The notes beneath the pieces were generated by a model. The model was not told where the DNA came from and ran no database searches. It saw only the letters and a program-made list of their open reading frames with translations. DNA of 64,000 nucleotides. It comes from Cyanophora paradoxa CCMP329. Taxonomy: Eukaryota; Plantae; Glaucophyta. Of the stretch, positions 11,193-43,924 are shown piece by piece. Each line of letters starts with the position of its first letter. Position 1 is the stretch's first letter. The position numbers and the translations under genes were made by a program. The stretch is from positions 1-64,000 of the forward strand of contig QPMI01000668.1 of assembly GCA_004431415.1 (NCBI GenBank), written 5' to 3'.

Positions 11193-14100
11193 CAGATATA
11201 TGCAGTCGCGATTTCGATTTTGATAAGAACGAAATTCGGAAACTTACAATTCAGTATGGCATTGTGACCGAGGTAAGTTCATTGTGTTTTTGATGTAATT
11301 CTTTTTTTTGAAAGTGATTGATCTTCAGAGTCATATTTTCCATCGTGGTAGATTGGTTTTCCTTGTATTTGAGGATGCCGCATCTGCGGATTTGTTTTAT
11401 GTACGTGTTGTGCGTGCCATGCTTTACTGCTGGTGTTGATCATAATGTGCGGCAGAGTCATGTGAATGACGACTTCGGGAATAAGTTCATCGTTTATTTT
11501 ACAACTGTGGAGGAGTTGAAGTACAGAAAGACATTGGATGAGATTTCTTCTTATGCAAATGACGGCAATGTGCTTCACCTGTACTTCACCTACGAGGTAC
11601 TGGCTATTTTGTTCGTAATTTCACGTGCATGACGCAACGTAGACTTGTGTCATATCTCTTTCTGAATTACGGGAGGTATTATTGTCTTTCGATATAACGG
11701 TACAATGTTTTTCTTTTTTTTTTCTCTTGTCAATGCGTTGCTCAGATGAGGGCCATATGTGTATTTCGGTATCGCGGTATCATACAAGCAAGGATTTCGT
11801 TCGCATCTTTTTTGGCCATGTCTAGTGCTCGAACATTTTTACGCGGGTAAATGAGCTTGTAATTTTATTTTGATAACTGTATTAACGCAATGAGTGTAGT
11901 TTCACGCATGTGCGCGTGTCGTGTTCAACGAATTCGGACATTGTGTCGGATTCTGTATACTTGAACGAGTACCAACTGTGGACGACTCCCGACTTCATTT
12001 GGCCAGAGCCCAAGAATAAATGTGCGTATGTTTATGGCGTTGATCATCGCTTTTATCCTGATTTATATCAGGTGTTCTGAGAATTGGCAAGACACCCGAT
12101 CGCCGCGATGATGCTGTGAATGTGGTGTTGATTGTATCAGACACTGTTTGTCGATATTTGCTGAAATCTCATCAAAAAGGTGAAATTCTTTAGATAATTG
12201 TTCGTATCTTGCTATACATGGGGTTTGACGTCATTTGTAGATATCCTGGAATTGGCCTACACTCCTGAACTTGACCCAAAATTCAATCCATATCCTGTGT
12301 CCCACAGATGTGGATTCTTTGATGATCTGGTTACGAAATGGTGGAAGTTGAACAAGAATCCACAGTCAGATGACGACAAGAAGCCTCATGCAATCAAGAA
12401 GTGGGAAGAAGCACGAGACAGCTTATTTCGTGCAATTGTCAATCGCGAGAGAGACTGTGAAGAGAAAGCTGGTCGTCCTCGTTCTGTTGAATTCTCATAT
12501 GATTTTTGCATCGATGACATCTTTGAAGATTTAACCATATACTCTCCATTGGGTACACTTAATTTTAGTAGTACGCTCGAACAATACAAGATTTGATTTT
12601 TATGTCTTCCATGTGCAGCCCGGGCTTTATTCGGGTGGCGTCGTCCTGTGATGTTGACATGTGCAACGGAGACATGCCTTTTCCAGGTGCATCGAAAATG
12701 ATGTTGTAATGATTTTCTTCTTTGCTGCTAATTTTTACCTGTTTTGAAGAGTCAACATCATGATGGAATTGCCATATCATGTGTTGATCTACGAATGGAG
12801 CAAGCGTATGTTCATCAAGAAGGCGAATCTCTGTTGTGGGATATGAACCTTGAAGCACATGATAATTTTTCATCACAATTAAACATGGTGCATGTTTTGC
12901 TGTTTTCGGTTCGTATTGAAATGAAATGCCATCAGATGAAGGGCTTCGCTTGTCGGGTGTGTTCTGGAGAATCAAAAATAGAGTGGTTAAATACAGCTGG
13001 TCCCCTTCCTCCAGCTGTTGCGATTCGATTGGACTGCCGCACATGTGGATTTCAGCTAATGGAACTTCCTCGAAGACTCATGGTTAGAACAAGTTGTATA
13101 TACTGTTCTATATTCGTGCTTATATTTTGGCGCAGTTAATGGAAGATATCTTTGGGAGCGATAAACGGGACATTGAGTACAATCTTACAAATGCCATTTG
13201 TAATTTCCCGGAACATAGAGATTCGTACAGTGTCTTGTGCATAGGTTCTTGGTTGACGACTCCTGGTGTGTGGGTCTACGATGATGTGCACTACAAGGGG
13301 AATCTGGTGTACTGTGGTGTCAATTTGGATGCAGTTGCTCTGGATTCTATTGATGGTTTCGACCTTCAACATGTCGAGTACCTTGTCTTCACCCGAACCA
13401 CCACTGAATACGACCATTGTTCAGGCAATTTGTCGAAATTGCCCAGAATCTTGGTCACACATGTTTCGTCCAAGTCGGTGCGATTGTTTTGTGAAGTTGC
13501 ATCCTATTTGCTCAAACAATTGTGCACAGAGCTCTGAGGACGAACGGGAACCGGAGTGTGCACCAGACATTGCAGATCCAACTCTAAGTCAGGTGGATCG
13601 CAAAGCTGCGAATACCATACAATGATGTGATATTCACGCTCGGGCAGAGCGCGAATGGCGATGAGGAGGAGGCACGCTACCCAGAAGATGACGTCAAAGA
13701 TGATGTCGAGACTCGCATGCAGCTGCAGGTGGAGAACGTGATTCGAGAGGAAGACGCACATCGGCCCCAAGAATCGCTAGAGGAAGCAGGCCGTGTGGAC
13801 GAGAGCAGTCGGCAGCAGCCCCTGTCGCAGGAGCAGGTGCGACGTGTTCAATAGTTTTCTGGGGGTGGAGCCGGGAAAATAGGGTGGTGATGGGGGAGAG
13901 GGGACATGGCTGCAGTGGTTTGTTTGACTTTTGACGCAGGAAGCGCCTGTGAACCGCAAGATTGAAGACTCTGGTGCTGTGGATGAGCTGGGGCAGGTGG
14001 CAGAGAGTTCAGGTCATTCACGCGTCGCTTCTGTCGGCCCTTCTGATGTGAACCATCTTGCCCAAGACCCGTTGTCGCCAGAGTGTGTGAACGAAGAAGA

Positions 14101-15000
14101 AACATATTTGAATGCTGGTATGTGTGATCGTCATCTTTAATTTGTTCTCCATACATCATGCTTACTCATTACAGATCTTGTCCGAGACAATGGAAGAAAG
14201 ATAATGCACCTTTCTTCAGTCATGTCATCGCTAGAACAAGAGAGTATGCACTATTTCAACTATCCAGAATTCTCGTTCTACTGTGTCAAGATGCAGAAAT
14301 GCTTGGCCTACCTCCAGAAAGCACGTTCAGCACGGTTGAACAGCATGGGTTCTGATCTTCATTCAGAAGTGGATGCGACAGCTACTTTGTTTGCAGATGC
14401 TCTCGCCAAGGAGCTGGAGTTCAGCATCCCATCAATGATGGGCACTGTTGCTTCCTTTTACAGCCAGAATGAAGTCGATGCTGCTATACTCGAAGCCGAG
14501 TGTGTGAACAAGCGTATGGCAAAATGTGTGGAGCTTACTGCTGTGATGTACGAACTGGACCAGGCAATGGCCGAAGTGAAGAAATCGAGCTTCAGTGCAT
14601 TTGCCACCTCAACAACGGTGTTCAACCAGTTGCAAACAAGGGACTACGTTGTGGCAGCACATATGGTGGTCGACAGCAGAAAGCTGGGCATGGAGTCATT
14701 GCGTCGAGCTCAACAGGTTTTGCAACGTAACAATGCCACCGTGTGGTGACAGAGCTCTCTACTTTCCCTGCCATCCCGTTGTTATCAACTGTGATAAGCA
14801 CCCACAAGTCATATTTTGCAACAGTCAAAAAGAATGTACAGAATTTCGTCAGTCAAGCTCAATTTTGGTGGGCGAAGGTCAGTGGAGCAGTTATTTCAGG
14901 GATTGAGGATGCATGTTCATGTCTACAAGATCAGTTTGATCCCCTGAGAATTCCTGTTTCCAGTGCAGGTATGCAATATTCAACATTCTCTTTGTCAAAA
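11193..15000 (+). CDS. Multi-exon coding region of unknown function in the Helitron (5' part cut off by the TIR element)
   Basis: Open exons (e.g. 12240-12575, 12744-13085, 13136-13620, 14204-14970) are separated by short GT..AG introns. Includes a CRVC..CRTC motif and acidic stretches. No family recognised. Confidence 0.5.
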
Positions 15001-15019
15001 TGTTGAATAAAAGACAGAT

Positions 15020-16120
15020 GAAGCATCCATGAGATCAAGAGACAAAGATGTCATACTTTTCAAATATGGAGATAAACCGATGAATCTCGAGGTATGTCTC
15101 ATTCAGTTCCAACATATTCGGTAATTAAAAAAAATCAGGTGATCTCTCGGCGGGATTGTCGATCAGTTGAACCAGATCGTTGGGTCACTGATGCTATAAT
15201 CGGGTTCTGGACCCAGTATGTTAACTCTTCCTTTGTGGTGATATATTATGTCTGACATCCGGGGTCAGGTATATGGAGACACTGTTCCCTAATGACAGTG
15301 TTCATGTTTTTGACACTAAGATGTACACGAAGCTGGTCAATGAGGTACGCATGTATTTTGCATCCGTGTAGAATCTATCAGATATTGCAACAACAGAAAG
15401 GCGTTACCGAATCTATGCTACGCAGGTTCAGAAAATGCGGAAATATACTGGACAAGAAGGCCGTGGGTGTCTTTATCAACATTCCAAAGTGAGTATGTGT
15501 TTCACTGTTGTCAATTTCAATTAATCCCACTGCACAGTTCCCATTATGTGTTTTGCGTCATGCTCAACTTCCAGAATATCTCTCGTGATGTGGAAGACGC
15601 TTCCATGGAACCGTGCATTTTGTGCTGCGACTCTTTAAAAGGCGAATGCGATTGGGCCACGATTTGTCAAAATTTGAAACTGTACGACACATTTCCTTTT
15701 TCGAGATTTCGAATCTAATATGGGTCTCAGTGCTTGGTTCACACTGTGGAATGATACATCCATGTACTCAGACTTTCTGCGAACTGCAGTCGATCCTCTT
15801 CGTAAAATTGAGTATGTGGACGTACAGGTACATGCTTTCAGACTTCGAAAAATTACGAAATGCACGTTGAATGAAAGCAGATGTTACAACAGTCCAACTA
15901 TTCCGATTGCGGTCCTTTTTGTATGAAACTGAGTCAACTCCTTCGTAATAAGTTGGACATTTTCCAGCCTTCGCGCACATCGACTGGGCTTTGGCTGTCG
16001 GTATTTCTTTTTTGTACTATAATATGATTTCAACTGATATCAGACAGCTCGAAAATCAGTTTGCTGCATCAGATATCGATGCTGTCCGATCCGAATTGTC
16101 AACGGTCATTCGGGAAAAGG
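15020..16120 (+). CDS. Ulp1/SENP (peptidase C48) SUMO-protease domain #1, spliced, Ulp2/SENP6-7-like
   Basis: Exon-stitched peptide: VISRRDCRSVEPDRWVTDAIIGFWTQ / VHVFDTKMYTKL / VFINIP-SHYVFCV / PCILCCDSL / LQQSNYSDCGPF, giving an H-D-Q-C catalytic set. Confidence 0.75.
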
Positions 16121-19104: not shown

Positions 19105-20420
19105 ATGCCTAGACTACCTGCAGGAATTTTGGAAGGTGTCGACGTGGACACCCAGTCTCCTCCTTGTCCGAAGCCGTCATGCAAAGGAGGGAGATGCTTG
19201 CATTGCACGGCCCACTGTTGTCAGCCCAAAGATTTATGCAGACATGTGCGGGAACATCGGCAGGGTTCGCTTATTCGATACCAGTGGAACAAGAACAGTT
19301 GTTGGTTGGACACTCTTCTCCTCTTACTGGAAATTACCATTCTATCTCTTGCTATTCACGATTTAGCTCCGACAGTATCTGATGTAGACGAGGTGCACAT
19401 CATTGGTGCAAGTGTCAAACATCTCGTACTCAAGCTACTATCTGAACCTTTTGGAACTTCTGTTGACACTTCATATCTCAATTCTGAACGAGATTTCATC
19501 CGGGAAAAATTAACACCGCATCTGCTGCCTGCTGAATTCCGTGCCCAAAAAGAGCACATAGATTCATCATCATCCTTCAACATACTGGAAGCAATCGATC
19601 GTGTTGCATTTTTCTCACGCACAGGTGCTATACAATTCATATTCAATCAGAAACAGTACTATATTACTCATTTCGTACTATTCCTGCTTCCAGTCTCCAC
19701 TATTTTTGGTCTACATCGAACAACTGTCCGATCTTGTCAAACATGTGCCAGCTCTACAACCAATACATCCTGGCGGAATCATAATTATGTTCATGCTACA
19801 CCATTACCACATTACATAACGGATACTGATGACGGATTATTATGGCGGTTTGGAGATCAAATTGCTGCAACTTGTTTTACAACAACAACCGTGGTGCACT
19901 TCTATGTTCATTTTGTGCGCTTGCTTATCCTTACATGATTGTTACATAGGCTTCTTCAAACAGTCAGTGCCTTCAATGCAAAGCCGCACGTACCGCAGAA
20001 CGCTGCTATGATGAATTACCTCTGGCCTTTACTGTGGCTACTGCAAACGCTTCATATGAGTTGCAAAACTTTCCCACGTCATTACTAGTGTGTTACTTGC
20101 ACACTAATTCAAGTATGTCGTAATTTCAATATCTGACAGTGGGTGTGCAGGTTCCAGATTTTTCCTCACAACATCATGTATTCAGGGAATACTGCCTCTC
20201 GACAGTGGTTGGGTTTCCTCGTCAGAATCACTACAATTGCATATTTTCAACTTCTATTCAGGGGCAATCTGGAATCTTTCTGTATGACGACCTGGCATCA
20301 GTGGGCACAAATGGAAGTTTGCAGTACATCGCACCTACGTTCAATTCTCTTCAACATACCCCATGTGCCAAATTCAAGCTTGCTGATATTGCTGCCTTGG
20401 TCTTCACGAAAACGAGCAAC
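19105..20420 (+). CDS. USP-fold cysteine protease domain (USPL1/C98- or C19-like), preceded by a Cys-rich segment
   Basis: Cys box YQWNKNSCWLDTLLLLL (~19280), CQTC..CLQC zinc pair, His box NHYNCIF...FLYDDL (~20230-20295). Confidence 0.6.
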
Positions 20421-20551
20421 GTTTCAAGTACTGTAACAGCTAATCATATATCTATTAAACGGAAAAATCATCTTCCGGAAGGTGCTGTTTTTCCAAAAGA
20501 TGCTGTTATTCCGGGTGCAATTCCTACCAATAGAGGTGCAAGACATCATTC

Positions 20552-21400
20552 ATGTTCACTAACATTTTTTTCTCTTACCGATCTTCAGCTTCGCATTCGA
20601 CGAAGCAAAAATTTATTGGAGTCGCTGATTCGATTGAACTCGACAGCACTGAACGGACGCGTATAACAACGAATGGTTGGTTTACCGGCAATATTATAAA
20701 CTACTACATTGGGCTTCTTAACGATGAACATCGGAGCTTTCGTATACCGCAAGCCAGAACGCATGTTGCTGTGGACACTCTGTTCCTTCCTCGATTGGAA
20801 GGAATGAATACAGGGATGTGCGGAATCTATACTGCTGAGCAAGCACTGCAGAAGTATGAACTCCGTGATCTCTTTCAACTTCACAATCTCCTCATCCCAT
20901 TGAATGTTCGGAACCAACACTGGGTATTGATTGTCATCAATATGCACGACTTCAGTGCCATATGGTTGGACCCTCTCGAATCTCAAGAATATACACCTTT
21001 CGAATTTCGTCAATCACGCATGCGCATCATTCATACCTTCCTCATGCAATCGTGGTCGTTACTATATGGTCATACCCCATTTCCAGGATCGAACTCCCTG
21101 ATCGTCGCCACGTCACCTACATCCTACCTGCCATCGTTCCTGTATCCATTCCAACCCAATTCCTTCGACTGCGGACCTTTTATCTGCATGTACATGAAGA
21201 TGTGCATGCGAAATTCGCAGATGCATCTTAGTAACGTTCATCTGGGCGGATTTCTCAGCACTCACGGGCCCATGGTTCGAGACGAAATCATGGAATCCAT
21301 TAATACCAACACTATCATTCGAACTGGCAACCGTTACAATGGTGCATGTGTTGTCGTTCCTAGCACGCTGTTCACACTGAAACACGTCCCTAGTGTTTAA
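20552..21400 (+). CDS. Ulp1/SENP (peptidase C48) SUMO-protease domain #2
   Basis: GWFTGNIINYYIGLL ... LLIPLNVRNQHWVLIVI ... WLDPL ... QPNSFDCGPFICMY. Confidence 0.85.
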   Translation: MFTNIFFSYRSSASHSTKQKFIGVADSIELDSTERTRITTNGWFTGNIINYYIGLLNDEHRSFRIPQARTHVAVDTLFLPRLEGMNTGMCGIYTAEQALQKYELRDLFQLHNLLIPLNVRNQHWVLIVINMHDFSAIWLDPLESQEYTPFEFRQSRMRIIHTFLMQSWSLLYGHTPFPGSNSLIVATSPTSYLPSFLYPFQPNSFDCGPFICMYMKMCMRNSQMHLSNVHLGGFLSTHGPMVRDEIMESINTNTIIRTGNRYNGACVVVPSTLFTLKHVPSV

Positions 21401-21499
21401 TACAAGTCAATATTCAAGAACTAAAGTGGATCCCGTCGTCTCCCCCATGAAATCTACTACGTCATGTGACAACACTCGATCTACAAAACAAGATAGCAG

Positions 21500-21630: not shown

Positions 21631-21687
21631 TTCGGAGACTCTTTCATTGCAGGACAGGAATCTGGTGGACATCGAATTGAGCAGTTC

Positions 21688-24600
21688 GTGTATATTACAA
21701 AAGAGTATTTCCTTCTTAATATTTTTGCAGTTCTCCAACGAAAGCAACGCGAGTTGGAGAAAAAGGAAATTCGTGCGAACACAAGTGATTTACCATTCGA
21801 CGTGACAGAAGAACAGCTGTCGTCGGCAGCGCAACGAATGTGGGATTTCCGCGAAGACAAGGCCAAGTTATTTAACGCAGAATTTTCAGCCGTATCTACG
21901 TACTGCATATGCGCTGTCTGCGGAGAACGAAAACCATCTACCAAGTTTCTGAAACAAGACAAGAATCGAATGTACTCTTTGCACAATGCCATTTTCCTTC
22001 CCTTGTTGACTGCCATTGAATCTTCGCAAGTGCGTTCTTTTCTTCCGTTTCTAACGATCATTTTCTCATGCTGTTATCGCATGCAGCGCCAATCTTCGAC
22101 CCAAATTCCTGCAGAAATCGTACACATACTTTTTTACCCAACAATTGTTTCATTACTGAAAACGCTTCAGGTGGCCCAACTTCTTCATGCAGCTGGCATC
22201 GCCCACAACAACGTATTCCATCCTCATGACATCATTCAAGATCGTTTGAATTCTATTATTCGTTCAAATGTCGGTCTGGTGCGCGTTGTATACACTGTCT
22301 TATCCAATTGTGAGTTTTCACGATCACTGCATCAGGAAACTGATCTTCGAATCAAGAATCTGTCGTCTTTTACAGCACAAATGTGTGCCTCATGTCGTGA
22401 GTGTTTGCAAAAAGACAATAAACCTCCAAAGTTCTGCAAGGCCACTGGTTTCGATTTTGGCGATATACCTCCCGAACTTGCAGAACTCACGGTACGTTCA
22501 CATGATTTCACATGTCCACTCTACACTCATCCCTGTTTTTGAATAAAAGGAGGCAGAGGCTCGGACAATCTCAATAGTGCTAGTCACTTCTACACTGATT
22601 CCTACTATTGGTCGTCAAAAGGCGAGTCGAGGGTGCACCATGACTTTCATCAACGACATCCCAGAATTTTGCAAAAAGCTTCCCCGACCAGAATCAGACA
22701 TACAAATGGTGTGGATCAGGTAAACGACACCTCATTAAGTAATGCGCGCACACTATTAACTTTGGATCAGATATCCAGGAACTGCTGCAAAGATGCCATG
22801 CATGGCAAATTTGCGACCTGACAAAATCTGGAGTGCTTTGATTTGGTTGAAAGACCACAATCCTTTGTACTGCGATGTCGAAATCGACGAAGACCTACTG
22901 AACTCATGGAGGCACAAACATGTCATATCAATACCAATTGCAGAAGCAAATGATGATCTCAACAATGATGTTTCAGCAGATGCGGCAGATGATGGACTCG
23001 AACAGCAACCACGAGCTGATCGTGGCGAGAATGTAGCAGAAGACGAACTTCCTGAGATAAGTGACCACTATCTGATTCCTACACCTCCTGCCAAGGGGAT
23101 GCCAGAAGATGTTGCCATGGCCTTTATCCGGAAAAAGTGCGGTTCTAAGGTACAGAACTATTCTTTTCCCCTCATTTTCAAATCTGATAATATCCAAATC
23201 TGGAAACAAATGACACTGGTTACGATCCAACCAAAGTCCACATATTCAACGCCAAGTCTGACCTCGAAATGTGCAAAGAGTACGAGGAGGGAGATCTGTT
23301 CGCATTGGCGTTTCCTGTTCTTTTCCCATACGGCCGTGGATCTTTCTTGAAATGGAAAAGAGGACCAGTCATTGCACATCAGCGAGAATACTTCGCATAT
23401 CTCCTGCGATTTTTCGACTACCGCTTTCAGCGATGCGCTCCATTTCTCTTCTTTGCACACGACCTCCTCCAACGGCATAAAATAGGTCATTCCAGCTATT
23501 CATTGCCATATCTTTACCATTTCCCACGATTTTCTAACGTTTCCCAGATGGCATTGCGTCTACTGTCTCCAGAAAATTGGAAAACAGTCCAATCAGTTTT
23601 TCGTCCCTCCCATCGAAGACCGATTTAATGGATGCTACCACTCAATGGAAATTCAAGCAGGCTGCACGGGATTTTCTCACGTCCTTGCAGCCATATTGGT
23701 CGACGTATGTGTATGAACTTGACATTGCCCTTCAGAATTTGACTCTCTTCTCAGTGTTAAAGGATCTCCGGGAGAGATGAAAGAAGCCAGGCAGAAGGCT
23801 TTTGGAATGCTAGAAGGCTCTGCTATGCCTCACATACGAGTGCCTACGATTTTCTCCACTACGTCCCCTGCTGATATTTTTTGGCCGGAGTTTTTTGTTG
23901 CATGCGGATATGCATCTTCCATCGAAGATGCCAAAAATCTATCCAGCTGACGTAGATTTCAGGCCCTCTCCGAGTTTCCAGCCCTTGCAGCGGAGATTTT
24001 CATGAATCGGTGGGACCTAATGCTTCATGTTGCATTCGGAGGTACTATGCCGTTGTAAATTTACTTAAGTCATGTTCGTTGCTTACCTGATTCCCAGCTG
24101 ATAAGACAAGGACAACAAATCGCCCAGAAGACAGATATGGCATCCTTGGTGACATTCAAGATTTTTTCTGGAGGGTCGAATGTCAGACCAGAGGAAGCCT
24201 TCACGTTCATGCCATCATGTGGTCAGTCTTATGGGGATTTTCACGTGACGACATCATCAACCTGCAACGGAACTGGAAGGGAAAGGAGAATACCATGCTA
24301 GTCTCGGATCCGGTCGATTCCAACATTGCAACCTACAGTCAAGATGGCAGAGAGCTTCTTGCTAAAATACTTGATTTATATCTGTCATGCATGTTACCAG
24401 ATGGCACACCTACACACACCAGCGAAGAACTCAGTGGGGTGATTTCAGCCCCTGTCTTTCTGTTCTGTTCCCTTTGCAATCTGTTCCAATGACCACATCG
24501 TTTACAGAACCCCCATTTGCATCCATCCGCCAAGCCATACGTCCCAGCCGACAGTCCGATGGATCCTGCCCGACTCCAGGACACAGTTGACTTGGTGACT

Positions 24601-31100: not shown

Positions 31101-31950
31101 CTCCAGATACGCTGGCTGGTAGCCCGGCCGCCGCCGCCGCCATCCGACCTCGCTGGGCGCGCGACCAAGTCCGAAGTCCGACCCAGACGGACAGGGCTGA
31201 GAGCAGACGACCAACTGGATCTCGGTGCTCCTAGCTCCTAGCCAAAGCGGCCCGGCGATCTGACGCAGGCTCTTCAAACCCGACGCAGCCGAAGTTGGCT
31301 AGCTTGCCCTGTTACTGCGTACCGGGGGGTGCCACTTTCCCCGGTTTTTCCCATACAAGCCCAATGCTACCATGGGTACCCCCCCCATACTCTGCTGTGC
31401 ATACTTTGACCGACACACAATTTCATAGTCTCTTCCACCACAGATGTAAATCCTGATTGCGTCATAACGCATCCCAAAACACCGTTCTGCGCCCACTGGT
31501 CATCACGCATGCAACTCTTTGCCCTACAAACGCCTGCACCTTGTCGTTTACATACAGAAACCCAGGAGCTGTGGACCGACGGAACAGAAATGTCGACACG
31601 CAATCTAACGCTTTCGATGAACTTGGCACTGCCTGCAGCAACTTTTCCGATCACAAGGTTCAGATCGACCATACCATCACAAGTTCTCACCAGCAGCTCG
31701 GACACACTTTTCACCTTCGATACGTCGAGATCTATCGATGCGCGTGCTGCAGCCGCTGACGCCGACGCCATCGCCATGCCTACTTCGACTGCTTCAGACT
31801 CTATGGGTACGTTACAAACGTTCCCTGGGTACAGTATATCCATCTTCCCACCTTCGTCATTTCCATAGGTCGTACACAGAACGACTACCGACATCGACCT
31901 TCACTTTCATAGTTCCAAAACTCCAGTACCAATGGTAAGAATCGGACCTT
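28150..31950 (-). CDS. Putative OB-fold ssDNA-binding (RPA70-like) protein, multi-exon, interrupted by the TIR insertion at 29513-31399
   Basis: SIRLQLSD|SGHCTNFVDGD...LLGKFVAITEVVVKANKY...TSLQTSTT resembles the RPA OB-fold pattern, with a C-terminal CNLC. Helitrons are known to carry RPA-like genes. Confidence 0.45.
29513..31399. mobile_element. Non-autonomous TIR element (1,887 bp), CAC-terminated, 3-bp TSD (CMC/CACTA-like)
   Basis: ~50-bp TIR CACAGCAGAGTATGGGGGGGG(G)TACCCATGGTAGCATT..TTGTATGGGA at 29513 and inverted ending at 31399. TSD CAT at 29510-29512 and 31400-31402. GC-rich interior, no transposase. Confidence 0.9.
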
Positions 31951-32859
31951 CCTGCCCTCCATTCGCGAGACTAACTCAACAGCAGAACGTCTTGACCACT
32001 ACAGATCACGAACCCAATGACAGCACTCATGAAGCAATTGCAAGTGACTCACATTTCGATGACGAACCTCCTCCGTTGGAACCTGACAACGATCCTCTAC
32101 CTCACCACGAACTTCATAATTTTACGCCTGCTCAGGCTGCCGCAGTTTACATATTCACTTATTTATTCATGCCCGAAGACTCTAGCACATGGTTAAACTT
32201 GATCGCCCATGTGCGTGAAGAATAAAAAAAGCGTCGAGAGTCATATAAATAGCTAGCCTCTCTCAACAATATAATCGCAATTCAATGTGTCACACAAGCA
32301 CCTGTCCGTCCCGCCCCTCCAACCTCGCTCTCCCTCGCCTCGCCCGACGCACTTTCTCCTCACCCCACCCCCGGTCTCACTCCCCTTTCCAATTCCTCTC
32401 CCTCGCCATGCCCCCCTACTCCGGATCCCATCCCCGCTCTTCCTTTCTGGCCGCATGGGACCTCGCCCCCCCTCACCCATCTTCTTGCCCCTCCCCGGCC
32501 ATTCATGTCTCGCCCTGTCTGACTTCGTCCTGCCCCAACCTGTTCCGCCCTGTTCCGCACGGCCCCCCCTGATGCCCCACGTCGCAACCCAACCCAGTCA
32601 CGCCTCAGGCCCCCCCCCCCCTCCCCCCCCCCACGAATCCCCCGCGCGCCTCTGCGCTCTCCTCAACAACCCCACGCGCCGCGTCCCGCATCACCCCCGT
32701 CTGTCGCCACGCCCTGCTCCAAACCCGCTCAGTCTCACCTTGCTTTGCCCCGCCCTGATCCGCCTCACCATGCGCCTTCCTGCCCCTCTTCGCCCACCAA
32801 CATCCAGCCATCCCTGCCCTCCCCCGCAACCCGCCCCCCAGCACCCCACCCTGCTGCCG

Positions 32860-34990
32860 CGACAGTTCATCAAATCAAATCGTTGGTTGCAGCACATGAA
32901 TTCACAACGACAAAATTCCAGGCAGGCGATCACTGCTGGTTGATCTGAAAAAACTGCAAAACTCGTGAACACACATAAACAATTGCAATATTTCCAATCA
33001 CGAACCCTCTTCTGGTGCATAACTCGGTTTTTGATAGTGTAGGAAAATGCATTGCACCATTTCTTGTAATCGTCCACTGAGAAAGCAAATGGTCCAGTGG
33101 ACGAGAACCGTTTCTCCTTAATCGCCATGTGTTTCACAAGCAAATCCCGGATATTCCCGTACATGTTCCTCACCGCCTCCGCTGAATGCCCATCGCATGC
33201 GTACACATACAGCAGTCCAAAAAATTTCAGCAGCTACGACATTATAGGTGAAGCCATCAGATCACGTATGCCAAACATGCATACCGGATGGATCTCCGAT
33301 ATATCTGTCTCCTCTTGCTCTTCAATCTCGTTCATCTTCTTCAAAATTGACGCAAGGGACTGGTCTTTATAAAACCTGCTCACCTGTTTCAGCCTTTTGA
33401 ATTTCATAACAATTCATCACACCTGTAATTCGATCTTGTACGAAGATCCAACTGACGCAGAATGCGCAAAGGCGAGTCCATGACCATTGCTTCCAGCTCC
33501 ACCGAAGAGAATTCCAAATTCGTGCTAAACACGTAAGCAGCAAAACCAAAATCTTCTACATATTTCTTCGCTCGCTTCGGAGATATCACTTTGTTGAGGA
33601 CCTCCAGTATCTCCTTTTTGACCACGAATCGTACGGACCGCTCCTCGTTCACGAAGTCCAGATTAAAATACAGACCATGAGAAATTACACATACGCATGC
33701 TGGAATCGTAGCATGCACAATCTCCGGCTCCAACCCGTGCACAAAAAACTGGCATGCCGGCATGTCGAAGCCTTTTACGACCGATTCAATATCGCAATGA
33801 TCCAGTGGCGTCACCTGAGGCAAATCAACCTCAAGTAATGATATCGAACACATCCGAGTCACCTGGATAGTAGGAATTCCAGGAGCATGAATTTGCACAC
33901 CAAAGACAAAATCAGAAGTCATACATCCCACGGTCGACACCCTTGGCAGGAAGACGAAACGAAGTTGGTCTTCGGCTTTCATTTTTGCGGCCAGGTATAT
34001 CATATCTAGAATTTCCAGGAAGTCTTTGTGGTCCCGAGCTTGCACGTACAAGTCCACATCTTGCCTGCCGAACCGAAAAGACAACAGTTATATACGTCGC
34101 ATACATGGATGTCGGACCCCTACACTCACAACGAATACTCGTACGCAGTTCCAGGTAACAGTAATGCCCGAGCAACACATCCGCCTGTAAAACAAAATCC
34201 ACACGCTCGAACCCCAACAATGTGAAAGGCATAAATACCTGCTATGAAGATTTTCCTTTTGATCGAAACACATAAATTGTCCAGCAGAGCTGCACTCCGA
34301 ATACGTTCGGCAACCACCCTTTGCGAAGACATGTATCCCTCAACGATAGGAATCCCTGGTCCAGCCATCACATTCGACGTACGCCGAACACTGCGTGTAC
34401 CATCACCATGCACCTGCGGCCCCATGATCGCCATCTCCTTCAAAAACGCGACATAAACATCAAATATATCAGACAAGCGCACCTCAAAGCTCCCAGACAA
34501 AACAAACACCGAGCCTGACTTATACAATTGCTCTAGCTTTACGCCAGACTTATCCAAAAACTGCGCTAGCGCTGCTCGAGGATGCGTAGCACATGATGAA
34601 TGCACTGCGTCGAAGAACCGGACGTTATGGTTCAAACCGACGATCATCTCAAACTCGAAGTCCGACTGTGCGAGTGTACCCCTCGCCGTCCTCCGCCCCC
34701 CCCCCCAAAAAAACAAATTCGCGATCGCCACCTTCGATTCCCTCTCCGATGCGTTCAAAACACATGTTCAGTCTTCCTGTCATAACCTGAACTGCCCCGG
34801 ATAAGCAGACTTCTTCGACACGATGCCGATCGCGACGCTTTCGGGGTACAACTCTCCGACCACGGACTTCTCGTCCGAGGTCGATTCCCTGTACCCGGAG
34901 GTTTTTTTTTCCCGCCGTCCGCCAATTTGCGATCGACCCTCGCATTCGGGCAAACTCTGCACCACGCTACCGGTACGCTTCCTCTTCGTG
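32860..34990 (-). CDS. Pol-beta-superfamily nucleotidyltransferase-like protein (virus/phage-type), multi-exon
   Basis: FTGGCVARALL ... QDVDLYV ... PTIQVT ... VVKGFDMPACQFF ... KRAKKYVEDFGF, matching the GG / DxD / FD..CQ / R..KY...GF signature order. Confidence 0.6.
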
Positions 34991-35429: not shown

Positions 35430-36287
35430 TCATGACTCGTCCTCATCAGATGAGGGGCCAATAGCCATAAAACAATGCCCCAGAACAATCACGAAGCTTG
35501 ATCTTTTTCAACGCGAAAAGATAACCAACGGCACGTACGCAAAAACCATAGCTACTCGCGGCCATCGAACAAACTACCGCGTTTCTAAAGCCCGAGGTGC
35601 ATCTCTTCCAAATCTTTCATCAGCTATGGCCAGCAACTGACCTGTGCCCTGCTCAGCTATGTACCTAGTGCAGAACGACCCAATGATTGACTTCGACGTG
35701 AACGACCTTGACCTCACCGACTTCTTTGCGAACATCGTCAGCAGCAGTGTCCCCAGTGCAAGCGATCTTCGTACCAATCCTACCCGCACCTTCTCTGAGG
35801 TGTCCCTTCTTCATCCTGATTCACCTGAACGCATTCAAACAGCTGCACGCACTTCCAAATGTACCCACCTTCAGGCACCTTACCCTTTCCACATTCTTCC
35901 TCAACCGGACTGAATGATCCATTGCCCTCACAGTGTTTCGACGTACAGCTCCATCTTCTCGCATGCTTGCAACGAGAAGACGAGAACGACAGCCCAAACG
36001 TTTCAGAAGCCTACGTATGGTATGGCTTCCAAATTCGTTTCAAAAATTCGACCTTCATCTCCAACAGGTCATGTCCAATTGAGGGATGCACCGAACTTGC
36101 CAGGGTTCGCGACATCGTACCCGACTTCTATATGCAATCCATACTCGATGGGGTGCGCACATCTTCTTCTTTGCAGATTCATCATCGTCGCCCTGACTAC
36201 CAGCAGTGCACCTCAACAAGCACAACTTCTGTGCGCATCTACAATACTGGAACCTGGGAACGTTGTCCCAATCACCAGGAAGACTAG
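35430..36287 (+). CDS. SP-RING (zf-MIZ) SUMO E3-ligase-like protein, copy 1
   Basis: VSLLHPDSPERIQTAARTSKCTHLQ|CFDVQLHL...SCPIEGC...DIVPDFYMQSILDG...VRIYNTGTW. Start is approximate. Confidence 0.75.
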
Positions 36288-36429: not shown

Positions 36430-37062
36430 TTAATCAGAGTCGAAGTCAAAATCAGCAAGTATCGCCTTGATTTCTTCCAGCTTGTCGATGGCCAGATCTC
36501 CCTTCGACACATGCCCCTCCACTGGCATGTATGTTCGCAGTTCATCCTCCAGTGAAACAACACGATCTTGCAATGTACGGACCCACCCCCAGGCGTCGTC
36601 CAGCTTCACTTTCACAGGGCACGACTTGCCACACCAGCACGAGTTGGTAGGGTCGGCACAGCACCAAACCAGACGCTCCCCTGCCAGCGCCTCCGCTGCT
36701 TCAATTGCAACTTTCACGGCATCCTCCGTTGACTTTTCCTGCATGGCTTGCTGAAACTTTGCTGCAGCAACCGAGCGCCTCGCTTTGCTGTCACGCTCGC
36801 CTGGATGAACATCTCCATCTCCTAGCGGTGGGCACTCTGAATCGAATTGAAGCCGCTGACTGAAGCTCTTCCACCACTTGTGTCTTGGCTTACATGAGCG
36901 TTTTCTCGGAACCTGCTTCCTCCGGTACTTCGGCTTGCTCTCGGCATCATCATTAACAGCTGAATCTGCAAATACATCATCCTTCTCCTTGACTTCCGAC
37001 GGTTGCCCAGAAGCCGAACTCATACCAGAGGACGAAGTCATCGCCTGTTTCGACATAGCCAC
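36430..37062 (-). CDS. Orphan protein X1 (basic N-terminal patch, WCCAD..CGKSCP motif); paralog of 38663-39301
   Basis: Clean 210-aa ORF with strong similarity to X2. It may have a short upstream exon. Confidence 0.7.
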   Translation of the reverse strand: MAMSKQAMTSSSGMSSASGQPSEVKEKDDVFADSAVNDDAESKPKYRRKQVPRKRSCKPRHKWWKSFSQRLQFDSECPPLGDGDVHPGERDSKARRSVAAAKFQQAMQEKSTEDAVKVAIEAAEALAGERLVWCCADPTNSCWCGKSCPVKVKLDDAWGWVRTLQDRVVSLEDELRTYMPVEGHVSKGDLAIDKLEEIKAILADFDFDSD

Positions 37063-37662: not shown

Positions 37663-38438
37663 ATGCAGAGATCAACATTCAGAGCTAAAAAGAAGCCTCT
37701 GAAGCCTTCGGCGCGCCACTATCGACCGGAAGCCACGCGCGACCCTGCACCGTTCCAGGGATTGGTGACTTCGCTCGAGACGACTACGGACGAAGACTAC
37801 AATGCTCTCGCCGCCAATGGCACGATAATCAAGCGATTCCTCGACCTCGATCACCGCATCACCTTCAGGCCATGGTACAAAGGCAAACAATATGGTGCAT
37901 GCCTCCCATACCTCTTCCACTCTTTTCTTCGTCAATCTCACCTACATCGCAGCTACTTCTCGAAATGAGAGTATACGACTCCCACTGAAAATTCCTTTCG
38001 GAGACGGCCGTATCCGAGTGCCTGTTCAATCAGTGTTCTGCAATCACCCGCACGTGCGCTTTCTCCTACCCAAAAAAAACCTCAACCTAATCTGAACACA
38101 GTGCTTTGATTTCCACGACCACATCCTTACATCTCATTGGTACCCAAACCGAATTCTGACTAAAGATAAAAGCACCCTCCATTCCCCCTGTTCTTATTCC
38201 TTTCTACAGGGTGTGTCCTTTCTGGTTTTGTGAGGCGAGGGCCGAACTCCAGGATCTCATTATCGACGAGTTCTTCATGTCGCTCCTTGATGGTGTACGC
38301 CCTTACACTATCCATCCACTACAGCTTCCATCACCCTTTTCCGAGCAGACCTCGACTCTGGAAATGGCCGTCGAAATAGATCCAGAGGGCAAGTGGACCC
38401 CTTGCTCATTCGACGCCATCACCCCCAGCAATGACTGA
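37663..38438 (+). CDS. SP-RING (zf-MIZ) SUMO E3-ligase-like protein, copy 2
   Basis: IRLPLKIPFGDGRIRVPVQSVFCNHPH|CFDFHDH...VCPFWFC...DLIIDEFFMSLLDG...AVEIDPEGKW. Confidence 0.8.
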
Positions 38439-38662: not shown

Positions 38663-39301
38663 CTACAAGAACATATCTAAAATTTTCTGGACTTCCTTCA
38701 TCTTAGAAACTGCCGACTCGGAATCACTGCTGCCTCTGTTCAACACACGTTGAATGAGCTGTAGCGTCCTAATAGCCGCGTCGCCCTCGTCAGGATCGTA
38801 TTCCCGCGTGCTCTCCGCCATCTCCAAAACTTCTCCGTGATATCTTTTGGCCCAAGTCCATGCTTCGTCCACCTTGATTCTCACGGGGCAAGACTTGCCA
38901 CAATTGCGCCAGCTGAGAAAGTCGGCACAGCACCACACAATCCGATCTCCGGCCAGCGCCTCACAGGCACCAATAGCAGCTCGTAAGGCAGCTATATCAG
39001 ACTTTTCCTCTAAGGCTGCATGAAACTTGGCTTGTGCAACTTCTCGTCTGGCATCTTCAGGCCTGTTGCCAGGATGCATTTCCCCAGGCGCCAACGCTGG
39101 AAGCACAGAGTCGAAATGGAATCGCTGACGATGGCTTATCTCCCAATCGAAGCCACTTCTACTCTCCATCATCGCTGTTTGCTTCTTCCTGGTCTTCCTT
39201 TTTCCCGCGACTGCTCCATCGCCGAGCGCAGCAACTGCATCTGCAGTACCGGTAGATGAGCTCCCTTCCCGAGGCGACGACATGTCTAGCAGCCTCTGCA
39301 A
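38663..39301 (-). CDS. Orphan protein X2; paralog of X1
   Basis: RFHFDSVLPALAPGEMHPG..AKFHAAL..EALAGDRIVWCCAD..CGKSCPVRIKVDEAW versus X1 RLQFDSECPPLGDGDVHPG..AKFQQAM..EALAGERLVWCCAD..CGKSCPVKVKLDDAW. Confidence 0.7.
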   Translation of the reverse strand: MQRLLDMSSPREGSSSTGTADAVAALGDGAVAGKRKTRKKQTAMMESRSGFDWEISHRQRFHFDSVLPALAPGEMHPGNRPEDARREVAQAKFHAALEEKSDIAALRAAIGACEALAGDRIVWCCADFLSWRNCGKSCPVRIKVDEAWTWAKRYHGEVLEMAESTREYDPDEGDAAIRTLQLIQRVLNRGSSDSESAVSKMKEVQKILDMFL

Positions 39302-40582: not shown

Positions 40583-40834
40583 AATACAGTTTCCAAGCAG
40601 GGCCCGACCCCGCCCCGCCCCGCCCCAACGTGCTTCCCGACGCCCCGCTTCCCCTTGCTTCATCCTGCCCCGCCCTTCCCTGCCCCGACCAGCCCAGCTC
40701 CACCTCCCCCCTCCCCCCGCCTTGCCCCCCCCCCCCCCCCCTTCACCTTGAACCCCCTCCCCAACCCACCCCGCAGCTCACACCCCCCTTACTTTTGACC
40801 TGCCCTGCCCTGTGCTCATATTCTGCATATGTAT

Positions 40835-41551
40835 TCAAATCCATTTGTCATACTTCATGTAGTTGTTCACTCGCTTTGCTATCACTTCTAACACATCTTT
40901 CTTGCAAAGCAACGAGGCAGTTCCAAGTTTTTCCAAGACAGTGTCCTTCAGCAGAGGAGACAGATCCTCCTCAGAAGCATGCCGTTTATGACAGGATGCA
41001 CACCTGCATCCTCTACCTACGAAATCAGGAATGTCCACATCAGAGAACAAATCGTGCACGAAGCACATCGTCTCCTCGACTGCGCTCGAGGAACAAGTAC
41101 ACTTAGCATACATCCCAAACCTTCTAAAAGGTACTTCCAAAAGTTACCTGTGGTGCAATGGTGTCGATCGAGCTTCACCAACATGTAGTAACACGAAGTG
41201 TCCATATACCCAGCGACGCTGGAAAAGTCGAGATTGCCACGAACGCTTGGGATTACAGCTGCAACCACACGGGGCATTTAGACAAATCATGACACACGGC
41301 GGAGATTGAAGGCAGTAACCACCTCCAATGGAAGAGACAATGGCAAAATCCCAGACCTCGGAAGGCGGCAGACGACAAAGTACGGGCGGAGATACCATGA
41401 CCCAATCGTCGCTGCCTATAAGAATAGCTGGTAGGAATTCCGATCGACCGTACAGCGGTAAGATGGCTGCCAGGTCACTTCTGGAACAAACGCGCGCTTC
41501 CATCTGCCCAAGGCGGGACCTGAGCTGTGCGAACGCAGAACTCTGCTTCAA
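40835..41551 (-). CDS. Unknown Cys/His-rich protein, multi-exon
   Basis: Overlapping minus-strand ORFs ending CTC...CFVH...CRCASCHKRH. Confidence 0.4.
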
Positions 41552-41920
41552 TCGTTGCCTCTGAACGGCGACTGGTCTTGCGAAATGCCCGGATCTGAGC
41601 TATCCTCAGCGGACGACAACAACCGAACTGTCGTACATACTACGAGAGCACCTTCAGCCGATGAACAGCCGGACCGCCCGGCGGCCTGCAAGTGCAGTAG
41701 CGTCAGGCACCACCGCCATGACGAGATAGAGAGCACGATTGCGCGAATCGAACCTGACGACCTGCAAACCACTGTACTCGCCTCCTCAGCTCCCTCGTGC
41801 GACGGTCGTAACCGCCTGATCCGAACGGCCCACTGCTTCCACCTCGCCGCCGCTCGGTCTCTTCTGCGATTGCAAGGAGAACGAAGTGCACCGTACCCCC
41901 AAATCGGCCGTCTCCGCCCG

Positions 41921-42847
41921 ATGAAGCGGCATTCCGATTCCTCAGAGTCGCATAGCCGCAAAACTCGCTCGATTAAATCAACCGGCAGCAAATTCCGACC
42001 GCTCCGCCCGGCCGAGTTGGCCAGCATCCACGATGGTAGCTGCGCAAGATCCATCCTCACCCTCCGACGTCTGGACAACTATTGGTTCTTCAAATCATTC
42101 GGTGTGTCCCTGCGACGCCCCGATGCGCGCCTCACCAGCAACACCCTTAAATTACGCAGCTAATCCCTGCGCGCCTCATGCCTGTTGCCTTGGCATTCCC
42201 CAGCCATATGGCAGATCGAGACCGGCAACTACGACTGCTTTCCCCCGGAGGACCACGACGCCAGCAAAATTTTTGAAAGAAACATCAAAAAACGCAGCAA
42301 GGGAACCTCGGTCGCTTCGGATACAAGCTCCAGATCTCAGCCTCAGCCATCGTCAAGTGCATCAACCCCTAATTCAAAATCACATGTCGTCACTCTCCTC
42401 GACCCCTCTACGAACGAGCTCATCACGTCAGCAGTGCGATCTAAGCAATGTCCGCACCTAGAGGTGCATTTCTCCACGAACACCGATCTTCCTTTCCGTG
42501 GCCTGATCATCTCATTCGCAGTGTTTCGACCTTCAAACCCACCTGAACACATGCGCTGGCCGCGAACAAGAACTTGACTACTCTAAGCAACTCTGGTAAG
42601 CATTACATTCCGTCATGCCCCCTCTTTCACAGATTTCCCCCTTCAGGGCGTGCCCAGTGCCCGGGTGCACATCTATTGCTACCATTCCAAGCCTCGAACC
42701 CAACTTCTTTCTTCAGTCTATTATAGATGGGGTGCGACCCCCTCCATACGACCTCATCCATGTCTCACACCCCTGCAGTGTGCCCTCACTTCCACCACAT
42801 CAGTACGAATTTACCAAGACGGAACCTGGACACGCTGTGCCCCCTAA
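41921..42847 (+). CDS. SP-RING (zf-MIZ) SUMO E3-ligase-like protein, copy 4
   Basis: VTLLDPSTNELITSAVRSKQCPHLE|CFDLQTHL...ACPVPGC...NFFLQSIIDG...VRIYQDGTW. The N-terminal exon IHDGSCARSILTL..NYWFFK is homologous to the other copies. Confidence 0.75.
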
Positions 42848-42899
42848 GCCATACTCAGAAAAGAGGCACGCTGTAAATTTTTCTTTTCAAACGACCCCA

Positions 42900-43790
42900 C
42901 TAGACAGGCTTCCATTTCCCATCGCGTCCAATTTCTACTGCCTTATGTTCGTCACTAGTCTGTGCATTCGAGAGTCAATACAAAGATCCCTTTCACAAAA
43001 AGAATCGAAAAACAAACCCCGTCAAGTATGGACAGAAAAAACTCGTCGATGATCAAATCCTCAATCTCAGCCCTTGCTCGGCAATCCCTCACAGGGCACA
43101 TCCTGCTCGATATCAAACACCAATCCAATCTAGGAAAAGAGGAGCATACCAGGACCCGCCAGTCAAACACGTCTCCAAGTGGAGATTGAAGTCGAAACAC
43201 TGTCGATCATTGAATACCAGTCCACTGCCATAGCAGACATCACTTACGTCCGGATGATAACAGTAAACAGACTGCGTCGGAACACGGATTCGGGACTCCG
43301 TCCCCGGATGCCGCAGAGACACATCCACCCTCCCATCTTCCTCATTCGCCCCCTCTCCAGTGGCCGCGCGCGCTTCTCCCGGCTCGACTGGCCTATACGA
43401 ACATGCTGCGTGCACATCTCAGCAATAGTCGCATACAGTGATGTACAGCTCGGCGGCGCGGCAAGGCGGGGAGAGCTGGGTCGGAGCGTAGCCGGGGCGC
43501 GGCGAACGAGCCGTGTCGACACTGAGAAGGCCTCGGACTCACTAAAGAGATATGAGCGCACCGTACTCGCGACCTTCCATCCAAATCCGATAGCATGTAC
43601 GATGGCCCAACTCTAGAAACATGCCCAGAACTATCCCCTTACGAATCTTGCCCACAGCCTCCTCTGCCGATAGGCTCCTCAACTCCGTGCTCAAATACTC
43701 CCTAAGATCGCTGAACTCCCCGCGGACCTCCTCCCGCGCGTACGTCCCTCGCCGCTCAGGTCGGCTGCTCGTGCTGCTCCTCGTCGCCAT
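42900..43790 (-). CDS. SP-RING (zf-MIZ) SUMO E3-ligase-like protein, copy 5
   Basis: MATRSS...FLELGHRTCYRIWMEGREYG; VSLRHPGTESRIRVPTQSVYCYHPD|CFDFNLHL...MCPVRDC...DLIIDEFFLSILDG...AVEIGRDGKW. Confidence 0.8.
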
Positions 43791-43924
43791 GCACGATCCC
43801 GACTCTCCGCTGACGACGCTGCTCGATCGGCTGGCACTTCTGCGTTCGCCCCCACTTGCCACCGGCAAGAGGGCACTTGTACCCCGGCCGTGCCACTGCA
43901 GCGGCGCCGCTGCTGAGCGCCGCG

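What the first reader, a model, noticed from the sequence alone, without database searches (positions are those of the whole stretch)
11193..43880. Giant Helitron carrying a putative SUMO writer-and-eraser toolkit
Seen: one compositionally uniform, lower-GC block contains RepHel, two C48 protease domains, a USP-fold protease domain and five SP-RING genes. Known: C48 (Ulp1/SENP) and USPL1 are SUMO isopeptidases; SP-RING proteins (Siz/PIAS, Nse2) are SUMO E3 ligases; SUMOylation takes part in transposon silencing and ssDNA/RPA repair signalling. Single Ulp1-like proteases are known in transposons, but I know of no Helitron with an amplified SP-RING array. Inference: this >32-kb element encodes both removal and addition of SUMO, possibly as an anti-silencing or repair-rerouting system.
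Basis: partly seen in the sequence, partly recalled or inferred. Interest (0 to 1): 0.92.

Follow-up and report, generated by a model that had tools for sequence, protein, structure and literature searches.

The report
Helitron island with SUMO-enzyme genes
A 33-kb stretch of foreign-looking DNA holds an intact rolling-circle transposon gene, two SUMO-protease-like genes and five real SUMO-ligase-like (SP-RING) genes, but nothing yet shows that the ligase genes travel inside the transposon.

Summary
RepHel is real and is of the HLE2 (Helitron2/Helentron) type: DUF6570, an HUH Rep split over three exons, and a Pif1 helicase. One C48 protease is firm and a second is weakly supported. Five SP-RING genes are real. 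All keep the zinc ligands, share two intron positions and have working splice sites. They fall into two subfamilies at about 30% identity.

The "USP-fold" call has no support from any profile, structure or homologue search. It rests on motifs only, and that module occurs twice, each time upstream of a C48.

The block is not uniform in GC. It runs 41-49% on the left and 45-61% on the right, and a 1.9-kb GC-rich transposon with inverted ends interrupts it. It does share one oligonucleotide and codon signature that differs from the host.

C48 and UCH cargo in Helitron-like elements is already published. An SP-RING array is not.

"One >32-kb Helitron" is unproven. I found no ends and no second copy. 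None of 82 distantly related loci carries such genes. The left edge abuts a foldback structure that reaches the window edge, and the right edge is a gradient. I put the chance that the SP-RING array belongs to the same mobile unit at about 0.35-0.4.

The parts
10721..11192 (.). 107-nt satellite made of strongly palindromic units, at the left edge of the low-GC block. An inverted counterpart lies at window 1-360.
11886..13537 (+). Orphan spliced gene. Its C-terminal module (13094-13537) is a paralogue of the His-box-like module at 20139-20666. This is copy 1 of the putative Cys/His-box protein.
   Evidence: no Pfam hit
14204..14749 (+). Orphan ORF of 181 aa with no family match
15076..16024 (+). 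C48a, a second Ulp1/SENP-like protease split over several short exons. Support is weak.
   Evidence: The Cys-box exon hits Pfam C48 at E 0.006. The N-terminal exon's best PDB hit is Ulp1 at E 0.012.
19105..20666 (+). It carries NKNSCWLD and HY...FLYDD motifs. The fold is not verified.
   Evidence: negative results
20552..21400 (+). C48b, a Ulp1/SENP-like cysteine protease with the HW, D and Q..DCG catalytic motifs present
   Evidence: Pfam PF02902 E 1.1e-14, 55 bits; SENP2/SENP1/Ulp1 in the PDB
21631..27849 (+). Spliced RepHel gene: DUF6570, HUH Rep (Helitron_like_N) and a Pif1-like SF1 helicase. This is the HLE2 architecture, without an endonuclease domain.
   Evidence: relatives
28307..31900 (-). 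Orphan gene or genes on the opposite strand, interrupted by the nested transposon. They bridge the sequence just downstream of RepHel and the right half of the block.
29514..31399 (.). Nested GC-rich non-autonomous DNA transposon, not part of the system. It has inverted ends of about 50 nt starting CACAGCAG and a 3-bp CAT target-site duplication.
32694..34767 (-). Three orphan ORFs of 180, 227 and 213 aa with no family match
35644..36287 (+). SP1, an SP-RING gene of subfamily B. Its CTHLQ|CFD motif is identical to the PIAS motif.
36433..37056 (-). unk210, an orphan single-exon gene with a WCCAD..CGKSCPV motif. It is a paralogue of unk222.
37663..38435 (+). SP2, an SP-RING gene of subfamily A
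38666..39283 (-). unk222, an orphan paralogue of unk210 at 41-43% identity
39801..40582 (+). SP3, an SP-RING gene of subfamily A
40838..42078 (-). Orphan ORFs on the opposite strand with no family match
42185..42844 (+). SP4, an SP-RING gene of subfamily B
42958..43960 (-). SP5, an SP-RING gene of subfamily A, convergent with SP4. Its 5' exon lies in DNA that is already 60-65% GC.
   Evidence: zf-MIZ E 4.2e-6

Best explanation
The interval is a 33-kb island of foreign composition built around an apparently intact autonomous Helitron-like element of the HLE2 (Helitron2/Helentron) group.

**Shown**
- A multi-exon RepHel gene carries DUF6570, an HUH nuclease domain and a Pif1 helicase.
- Upstream on the same strand lie two diverged copies of a two-part module: an orphan Cys/His-box protein followed by a Ulp1/SENP-type C48 protease.
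- Downstream lie orphan genes and five spliced, divergent SP-RING genes of PIAS-like sequence. These alternate with orphan genes on the opposite strand.

**Inferred**
- RepHel nicks and unwinds the element for rolling-circle transposition.
- The C48 enzymes remove SUMO or a related modifier from host or element proteins.
- The SP-RING proteins bind charged Ubc9 and direct SUMO to targets.

Together these would let the island rewrite SUMO marks that many eukaryotes use for heterochromatic silencing and for the SMC5/6 (Nse2) response to foreign or single-stranded DNA.

**My commitments**
- RepHel is an HLE2 element: 0.95.
- The protease modules are its cargo: about 0.7.
- The SP-RING array belongs to the same mobile unit: about 0.35-0.4.
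- The SP-RING array is of mobile or foreign origin rather than an old host cluster: about 0.6.
For: - RepHel domains and motifs.
- The closest library relatives share the DUF6570-Helitron_like_N-PIF1 architecture, and one has a fused UCH domain.
- The literature reports Peptidase_C48 and UCH stably included in Helitron-like elements, and names DUF6570 as the HLE2 marker (PMC11417382).
- C48b is firm.
- The proteases sit on the same strand directly upstream of RepHel.
- All five SP-RING genes have invariant ligands, shared intron positions and canonical splice sites.
- The tetranucleotide signature and GC3 are the same across the protease, RepHel, orphan and SP-RING genes, and differ from host exons.
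- The only host-like DNA inside the block is a nested transposon with a target-site duplication.
- A gene on the opposite strand spans that insertion and ties the two halves together.
- RepHel and the SP genes have the same kind of roughly 50-nt GT-AG introns.
Against: - No Helitron ends were found: no inverted match of 12 nt or more beyond chance between the left edge and 27.8-44.3 kb, and no perfect hairpin of 9 bp or more downstream of RepHel.
- No second copy or close relative exists in any collection. The best helicase hit among 1.84 billion representatives is 31% identical.
- None of the 82 distantly related Helitron loci (571 kb) has an SP-RING motif or any similarity to the cargo.
- The SP paralogues are only 28-33% identical, so the array is old.
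- The right boundary is a GC gradient, and SP5's first exon has an intermediate GC3 of 0.69.
- GC, CpG and TpG statistics differ somewhat between the left and right halves.
- No enzyme activity or substrate is known.
Confidence: 0.55

Rival explanations
1. The whole 11.2-44.0 kb is one giant Helitron that transposes as a unit and carries both the SUMO proteases and the five-gene SP-RING array as cargo.
For: - One compositional class runs across the block.
- No host-like DNA lies between RepHel and the array, apart from a nested transposon with a target-site duplication.
- Seven SUMO-pathway genes within 33 kb form a functionally coherent set.
- Every gene is an orphan or highly divergent, as is common for transposon cargo.
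Against: - No ends, no hairpin and no second copy were found.
- The cargo sits on both strands, behind orphan genes.
- The right edge is gradual.
- The left edge is unresolved, because a foldback structure runs to the window edge.
- Related elements show no such cargo.
Confidence: 0.35
2. The SP-RING/orphan cluster is a fast-evolving host gene family that sits in a small, transposon-rich, low-GC pocket. An unrelated Helitron carrying its own protease cargo inserted beside it.
For: - The paralogues are old, at 28-33% identity, and form two subfamilies with conserved introns and ligands, which points to long purifying selection in place.
- The right edge is a GC gradient, and SP5's 5' exon is partly host-like.
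- GC and CpG/TpG statistics shift between the halves.
- No related Helitron carries SP-RING genes.
Against: - GC3 of the SP genes (0.46-0.69) matches RepHel (0.51-0.53), not host exons (0.71-0.92).
- The tetranucleotide signature of the array correlates 0.78 with RepHel and 0.23-0.60 with the flanks.
- SUMO ligase genes landing next to SUMO protease genes by chance is improbable. This is inference.
Confidence: 0.25
3. The island is another kind of large mobile or horizontally acquired element, with the Helitron as a passenger or a later insertion. Candidates are a different giant transposon, an integrated virus-like element, or part of a large inverted duplication.
For: - The composition is foreign.
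- There are many orphan genes.
- The block abuts an 11-kb foldback structure with inverted satellites, and the mirror symmetry reaches the window edge.
Against: - No hallmark gene of any other mobile element or virus was detected in the ORFs scanned.
- The genes carry spliceosomal introns like those of RepHel.
Confidence: 0.1

Closest known systems
HLE2 Helitron-like elements (Helitron2/Helentron group) with captured protease domains, as surveyed with HELIANO (PMC11417382)
   Same: - The transposase has DUF6570, Helitron_like_N and PIF1.
- Peptidase_C48-type protease genes lie next to RepHel. The survey also reports UCH, but my UCH call is unverified.
- The closest library relatives have the same architecture, one with a fused UCH.
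   Different: - The helicase is at most 31% identical to anything in the library.
- There is no endonuclease domain.
- The protease module is duplicated.
- No ends could be defined.
- An SP-RING gene array in the same island is not among the captured domains named in that paper's main text. Its supplementary table could not be read.
PIAS/Siz SUMO E3 ligases (SP-RING, Pfam zf-MIZ)
   Same: - The first half aligns to the start of the PIAS2/PIAS3/SIZ2 SP-RING and to zf-MIZ positions 1-25.
- C-x-H-x2-C-F-D is invariant, and in SP1 it reads CTHLQ|CFD.
- A G-x-W motif follows the finger, as in PIAS/Siz. That comparison is from memory.
   Different: - These are small proteins, and no SAP or PINIT domain was detected.
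- The last ligand pair is C-P-x3-C, whereas I recall C-P-x-C for PIAS.
- No single exon reaches the Pfam cut-off.
- There are five divergent paralogues in a 8.3-kb array beside a transposase.
Nse2/Mms21, the SP-RING subunit of SMC5/6
   Same: Both are small SP-RING proteins. The C-P-x3-C spacing of the last ligand pair, followed by an acidic/hydrophobic helix, resembles Nse2 as I remember it. This is a lead, not a test.
   Different: No zf-Nse hit was returned. The first half is PIAS-like. No SMC5-binding N-terminal helices could be assessed.
Ulp1-like proteases carried by other DNA transposons (for example Mutator-like and Ginger elements; PMC2836005 listed)
   Same: A C48 protease is encoded beside a transposase.
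   Different: The carrier here is a rolling-circle element, the protease is duplicated together with a second Cys/His-box module, and SUMO-ligase-like genes lie in the same island.

Membership tests
Helitron-like element, HLE2 group | RepHel protein with an HUH Rep nuclease plus an SF1 Pif1-like helicase | tested here: met
   Helitron_like_N appears in three colinear exons. PIF1 scores E 8e-12. The HUH and Y..Y motifs were read directly.
Helitron-like element, HLE2 group | DUF6570 N-terminal to Rep, the marker of HLE2 according to PMC11417382 | tested here: met
   DUF6570 scores E 6e-7, 30.4 bits against a cut-off of 24.3, and a second piece scores E 0.013.
Helitron-like element, HLE2 group | Defined ends: short terminal inverted repeats, a 3' hairpin, and insertion between T and T | tested here: inconclusive
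   The only inverted match was 12 nt, at chance level. No perfect hairpin of 9 bp or more occurs downstream of RepHel. The left edge is masked by a satellite/foldback structure.
Helitron-like element, HLE2 group | Several copies that share ends but have different flanks | not testable with these tools
   The source genome is not available. No copy was found in the window or in the collections.
Helentron subgroup | AP-endonuclease (Exo_endo_phos) domain fused to RepHel | tested here: not met
   No such hit in any RepHel ORF.
Peptidase C48 (Ulp1/SENP) | Catalytic domain with the His, Asp, Gln and Cys motifs, scoring above the Pfam cut-off | tested here: met
   C48b scores 55.3 bits against 20.7 and aligns to SENP2 with HW and DCG in place. 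C48a has only weak exon hits.
Peptidase C48 (Ulp1/SENP) | Specificity for SUMO rather than NEDD8 or another modifier | not testable with these tools
   This needs an enzyme assay. The best PDB hits are SUMO proteases, but SENP8 also appears for C48a.
SP-RING (zf-MIZ; PIAS/Siz/Nse2) | Ligand pattern C-x-H-x2-C ... C-P-x(1-3)-C, with the CFD and Trp landmarks | tested here: met
   The pattern is invariant in all five genes once the two conserved introns are taken into account.
SP-RING (zf-MIZ; PIAS/Siz/Nse2) | Score above the Pfam gathering cut-off (33.5 bits) | tested here: inconclusive
   The domain is split over three exons. The best single exon scores 26.9 bits, and four of the five first halves hit model positions 1-25. 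The spliced product was deliberately not joined or searched.
SP-RING (zf-MIZ; PIAS/Siz/Nse2) | Ubc9 binding and SUMO E3 activity | not testable with these tools
   This needs biochemistry.
PIAS/Siz proper | SAP and PINIT domains N-terminal to the SP-RING | tested here: not met
   The N-terminal exons of SP2, SP3 and SP5 have no Pfam hit.
USP/UCH (C19) or USPL1 (C98) protease | A recognisable USP fold with Cys box and His box | tested here: inconclusive
   Motif-like strings are present in two paralogous modules. Against that:
- no Pfam hit
- no PDB hit
- no homologues
- no similarity to a Helitron-borne UCH domain
- a structure model with pLDDT 40

The most novel reading that the evidence does not exclude
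A lineage of rolling-circle transposons carries its own SUMO toolkit. This consists of a small family of SP-RING E3 ligases in two subfamilies plus duplicated Ulp1-type proteases. The element would use it to rewrite SUMO marks on host silencing or SMC5/6-type restriction factors, or on its own RepHel. That would make it a first case of a transposon-encoded SUMO writer-and-eraser system.
Probability: 0.3. Interest if true: 0.82.

Novelty: new variant of a known kind. Interest (0 to 1): 0.55.

Why it matters
SUMO is central to transposon silencing and to the restriction of foreign or extrachromosomal DNA by SMC5/6, whose own E3 (Nse2) is an SP-RING protein. Viruses are known to subvert SUMO. A transposon that brings its own E3 ligases as well as proteases would extend that arms race to transposable elements. 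It would also supply compact, divergent SP-RING enzymes for study.

If the array is instead a host family, it is still an unusual, rapidly diversifying cluster of minimal SUMO-ligase-like genes sitting against a Helitron.

Either reading can be tested directly with the source genome and a few enzyme assays.

Tried and rejected
**Searches that found nothing**
- Word-indexed protein searches with the helicase ORF, the orphan unk222 and the Cys/His-box ORF returned nothing close.
- The exhaustive HMMER search with the helicase gave a best hit of 31% identity. The contigs of two relatives (P0010, P0035) were short metagenome pieces with no informative neighbours.
- Scans with the helicase in viral contigs, and with the DLIIDEFF/CPxxxC exon profile in metagenome contigs, gave no confirmed relative. 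The five-gene exon alignment was too divergent to search with.
- The HUH-motif profile retrieved 80 metagenome Helitron loci, but none had SP-RING motifs or cargo similarity.
- Exact-product look-ups of the two single-exon orphan genes found no record.
- Searches for terminal inverted repeats and hairpins found nothing beyond chance.
- Rfam returned no match.
- A regex for an E2-like HPN motif found nothing.
- Literature searches found no paper linking Helitrons with SP-RING or PIAS.

**Tests of the USP fold, all negative or unusable**
- Pfam, PDB and BLASTP/hhalign against a Helitron-borne UCH domain gave no support.
- The single-sequence AlphaFold model had pLDDT 40, so I ran no fold search on it.

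**Ideas rejected**
- That the 66%-GC stretch at 29.5-31.4 kb marks the end of the element. It is a nested transposon with a target-site duplication.
- That a run of 6-bp palindromes at 10660-10716 is a cloning-site relic. Equal or higher densities occur elsewhere in the window.

**Step deliberately left out**
All SP-RING, C48a and RepHel evidence is exon by exon.


Full report
**Setting.** The window is eukaryotic. Its flanks are very GC-rich (65-80%), and a low-GC island runs from about 10.6 kb to 44.0 kb. Genes in the island are split by short GT-AG introns of about 45-70 nt. I could not name the host. Its exons have GC at third codon positions (GC3) of 0.71-0.92.

**RepHel.** The + strand between 21.6 and 27.85 kb encodes a RepHel transposase.
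- DUF6570 scores E 6e-7, with a second piece at E 0.013. PIF1 scores 8e-12, alongside AAA_19, AAA_30 and UvrD_C_2.
- Helitron_like_N is found in three colinear exons covering model positions 1-30, 87-128 and 164-190.
- The HUH motif (SLHVHAIMW context) and the tyrosine motif are readable.
- One intron, at 27129-27178, restores the helicase frame exactly.
- An exhaustive HMMER search of 1.84 billion representatives gave a best hit of only 31% identity at E 5.5e-21.
- Four hits were scanned in Pfam, three of which align from the start of the query. All four have the DUF6570-Helitron_like_N-PIF1 architecture, and one carries a C-terminal UCH domain.
- By the criterion of the HELIANO survey, where DUF6570 marks HLE2 (PMC11417382), this is an HLE2 element. 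It has no endonuclease domain, so it is closer to Helitron2 than to Helentron.

**Proteases.** C48b (20552-21400) is a solid Ulp1/SENP domain.
- It scores 55 bits in Pfam.
- It hits SENP2, SENP1 and Ulp1 in the PDB, with the HW and DCG catalytic motifs aligned.

C48a (15076-16024) is fragmented into short exons.
- Its N-terminal exon has Ulp1 as best PDB hit (E 0.012).
- Its Cys-box exon hits C48 in Pfam (E 0.006).
- I accept it as probable.

The "USP-fold" domain is a different matter.
- The ORFs at 19105-19938 and 20139-20666 carry strings that resemble USP Cys and His boxes.
- Against that, there was no Pfam hit, no PDB hit, no homologue, no similarity to the UCH domain of a related Helitron, and no usable structure model.
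- I did find that the His-box-like module has a paralogue at 13094-13537 (E 7e-6 in pairwise comparison).
- The left half of the island is therefore two diverged copies of a two-part module: Cys/His-box protein followed by C48.

C48 and UCH domains are already reported as stably captured in Helitron-like elements.

**SP-RING genes.** There are five: SP1 35644-36287, SP2 37663-38435, SP3 39801-40582 and SP4 42185-42844 on the + strand, and SP5 43960-42958 on the - strand.
- In each, the finger is split into three exons by a phase-0 intron after C-x-H-x-x and a phase-2 intron inside the Trp codon before C-P-x3-C.
- Nine of the ten donor/acceptor pairs are GT-AG, and one is GC-AG.
- C, H, the C of CFD, C and C are invariant.
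- Four of the five first-half exons hit zf-MIZ model positions 1-25, with E from 4e-6 to 0.08.
- A profile of the five first halves hits PIAS2, PIAS3 and SIZ2 exactly at the start of their SP-RINGs.
- No single exon reaches the Pfam cut-off.
- By the N-terminal exons, SP2, SP3 and SP5 are related at 28-33% identity. By the motifs of the finger and the tail, SP1 and SP4 form a second subfamily.
- The genes alternate with orphan genes on the opposite strand. Two of these, unk210 and unk222, are 41-43% identical paralogues with no relative anywhere.
- These are real genes that have been maintained for a long time.
- No SAP or PINIT domain, and no E2-like gene, was seen.

**One block?** GC is not uniform. 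It is 41-49% on the left and 45-61% on the right, where C-rich tracts give a strong negative GC skew. The 66%-GC stretch at 29514-31399 is a nested transposon with inverted ends of about 50 nt and a CAT duplication. The island was therefore contiguous before that insertion, and a gene on the opposite strand spans the insertion site.
- Tetranucleotide signatures of all sub-blocks correlate 0.5-0.83 with one another and 0.03-0.6 with the flanks. The SP array against RepHel gives 0.78.
- GC3 is 0.36-0.69 for all island genes, against 0.71-0.92 for host exons.
- The island is therefore one compositional class, foreign to the host.

**One Helitron?** This is not shown.
- No terminal inverted repeat or 3' hairpin was found.
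- The left edge at 11188 is the outer end of a satellite of palindromic 107-nt units. An inverted twin of that satellite lies at window 1-360, around an 11-kb structure with inverted arms at 785-3980 and 7087-10299. The symmetry reaches the window edge, so the true left limit cannot be seen.
- The right edge is a GC gradient inside SP5.
- No second copy exists in the window or in any collection I could query.
- The 82 distantly related Helitron loci (571 kb) carry no SP-RING motif and no cargo similarity. This is weak negative evidence, because those loci are short and remote.

**Verdict.** The Helitron with Ulp1-type cargo is a new member of a known kind. The SP-RING array beside it is unreported in the literature I could search, and its function fits suggestively with the proteases. 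Whether it is cargo of the same mobile unit remains open, and I put that at about 0.35-0.4. The proposed anti-silencing or repair-rerouting role is inference from general knowledge of SUMO biology.

Noticed in passing
window 1-11188: This is an 11-kb foldback-like structure. Inverted 107-nt satellites lie at both ends (1-360 and 10721-11188, both ending in the palindrome AGTATTGCAATACT). Inverted arms at 785-3980 and 7087-10299 are about 94% identical overall, and several unique segments are 98-100% identical. The symmetry runs to the window edge. It may be a foldback transposon, a segmental palindrome or an assembly fold-back.
   Followed up: partly
window 29514-31399: A nested GC-rich (66%) non-autonomous DNA transposon with inverted ends of about 50 nt starting CACAGCAG and a 3-bp CAT target-site duplication. 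It interrupts a gene on the opposite strand.
   Followed up: yes
window 2750-5750 and 7040-8360: Large arrays of a 39-41-nt, roughly 80%-GC minisatellite, in opposite orientation in the two arms of the foldback structure.
   Followed up: no
window 11886-16024 and 19105-21400: The protease region is a diverged duplication of a two-part module, Cys/His-box protein followed by C48. The His-box-like parts (13094-13537 and 20139-20666) match at E 7e-6.
   Followed up: partly
window 36433-37056 and 38666-39283 (- strand): Two orphan single-exon paralogues, 41-43% identical, with a Cys-rich WCCAD..CGKSCPV motif. They alternate with the SP-RING genes. The word-indexed search run with unk222 found no homologue.
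   Followed up: partly
window 32200-33000, 38440-38560, 40600-40800: C-rich tracts that would translate as proline-rich sequence. The last two follow SP2 and SP3. Their C-richness probably contributes to the higher GC and the negative GC skew (about -0.22 to -0.31) of the right half of the island.
   Followed up: no
window 44817-45305 (+), 51196-53503 (+), 57047-57436 (-): Host exons with high GC3. The first is a C3HC4 RING-finger protein directly beside SP5. The second set looks like an erythromycin-esterase-like protein by motifs (GEASHGT, WAHNSH). The third carries a TTEKD motif reminiscent of LpxK. All three are motif-level readings only.
   Followed up: no
window 62036-62080: A run of about 35 consecutive C residues inside 77-80%-GC host DNA.
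   Followed up: no
window 10660-10716: A dense run of 6-bp palindromes (CCTAGG, AGGCCT, GCATGC, CTGCAG, CAGCTG, GGATCC, ACTAGT, AGTACT) that looks like a cloning polylinker at first sight. Equal or higher palindrome densities occur elsewhere in the window, so it is probably not special.
   Followed up: partly
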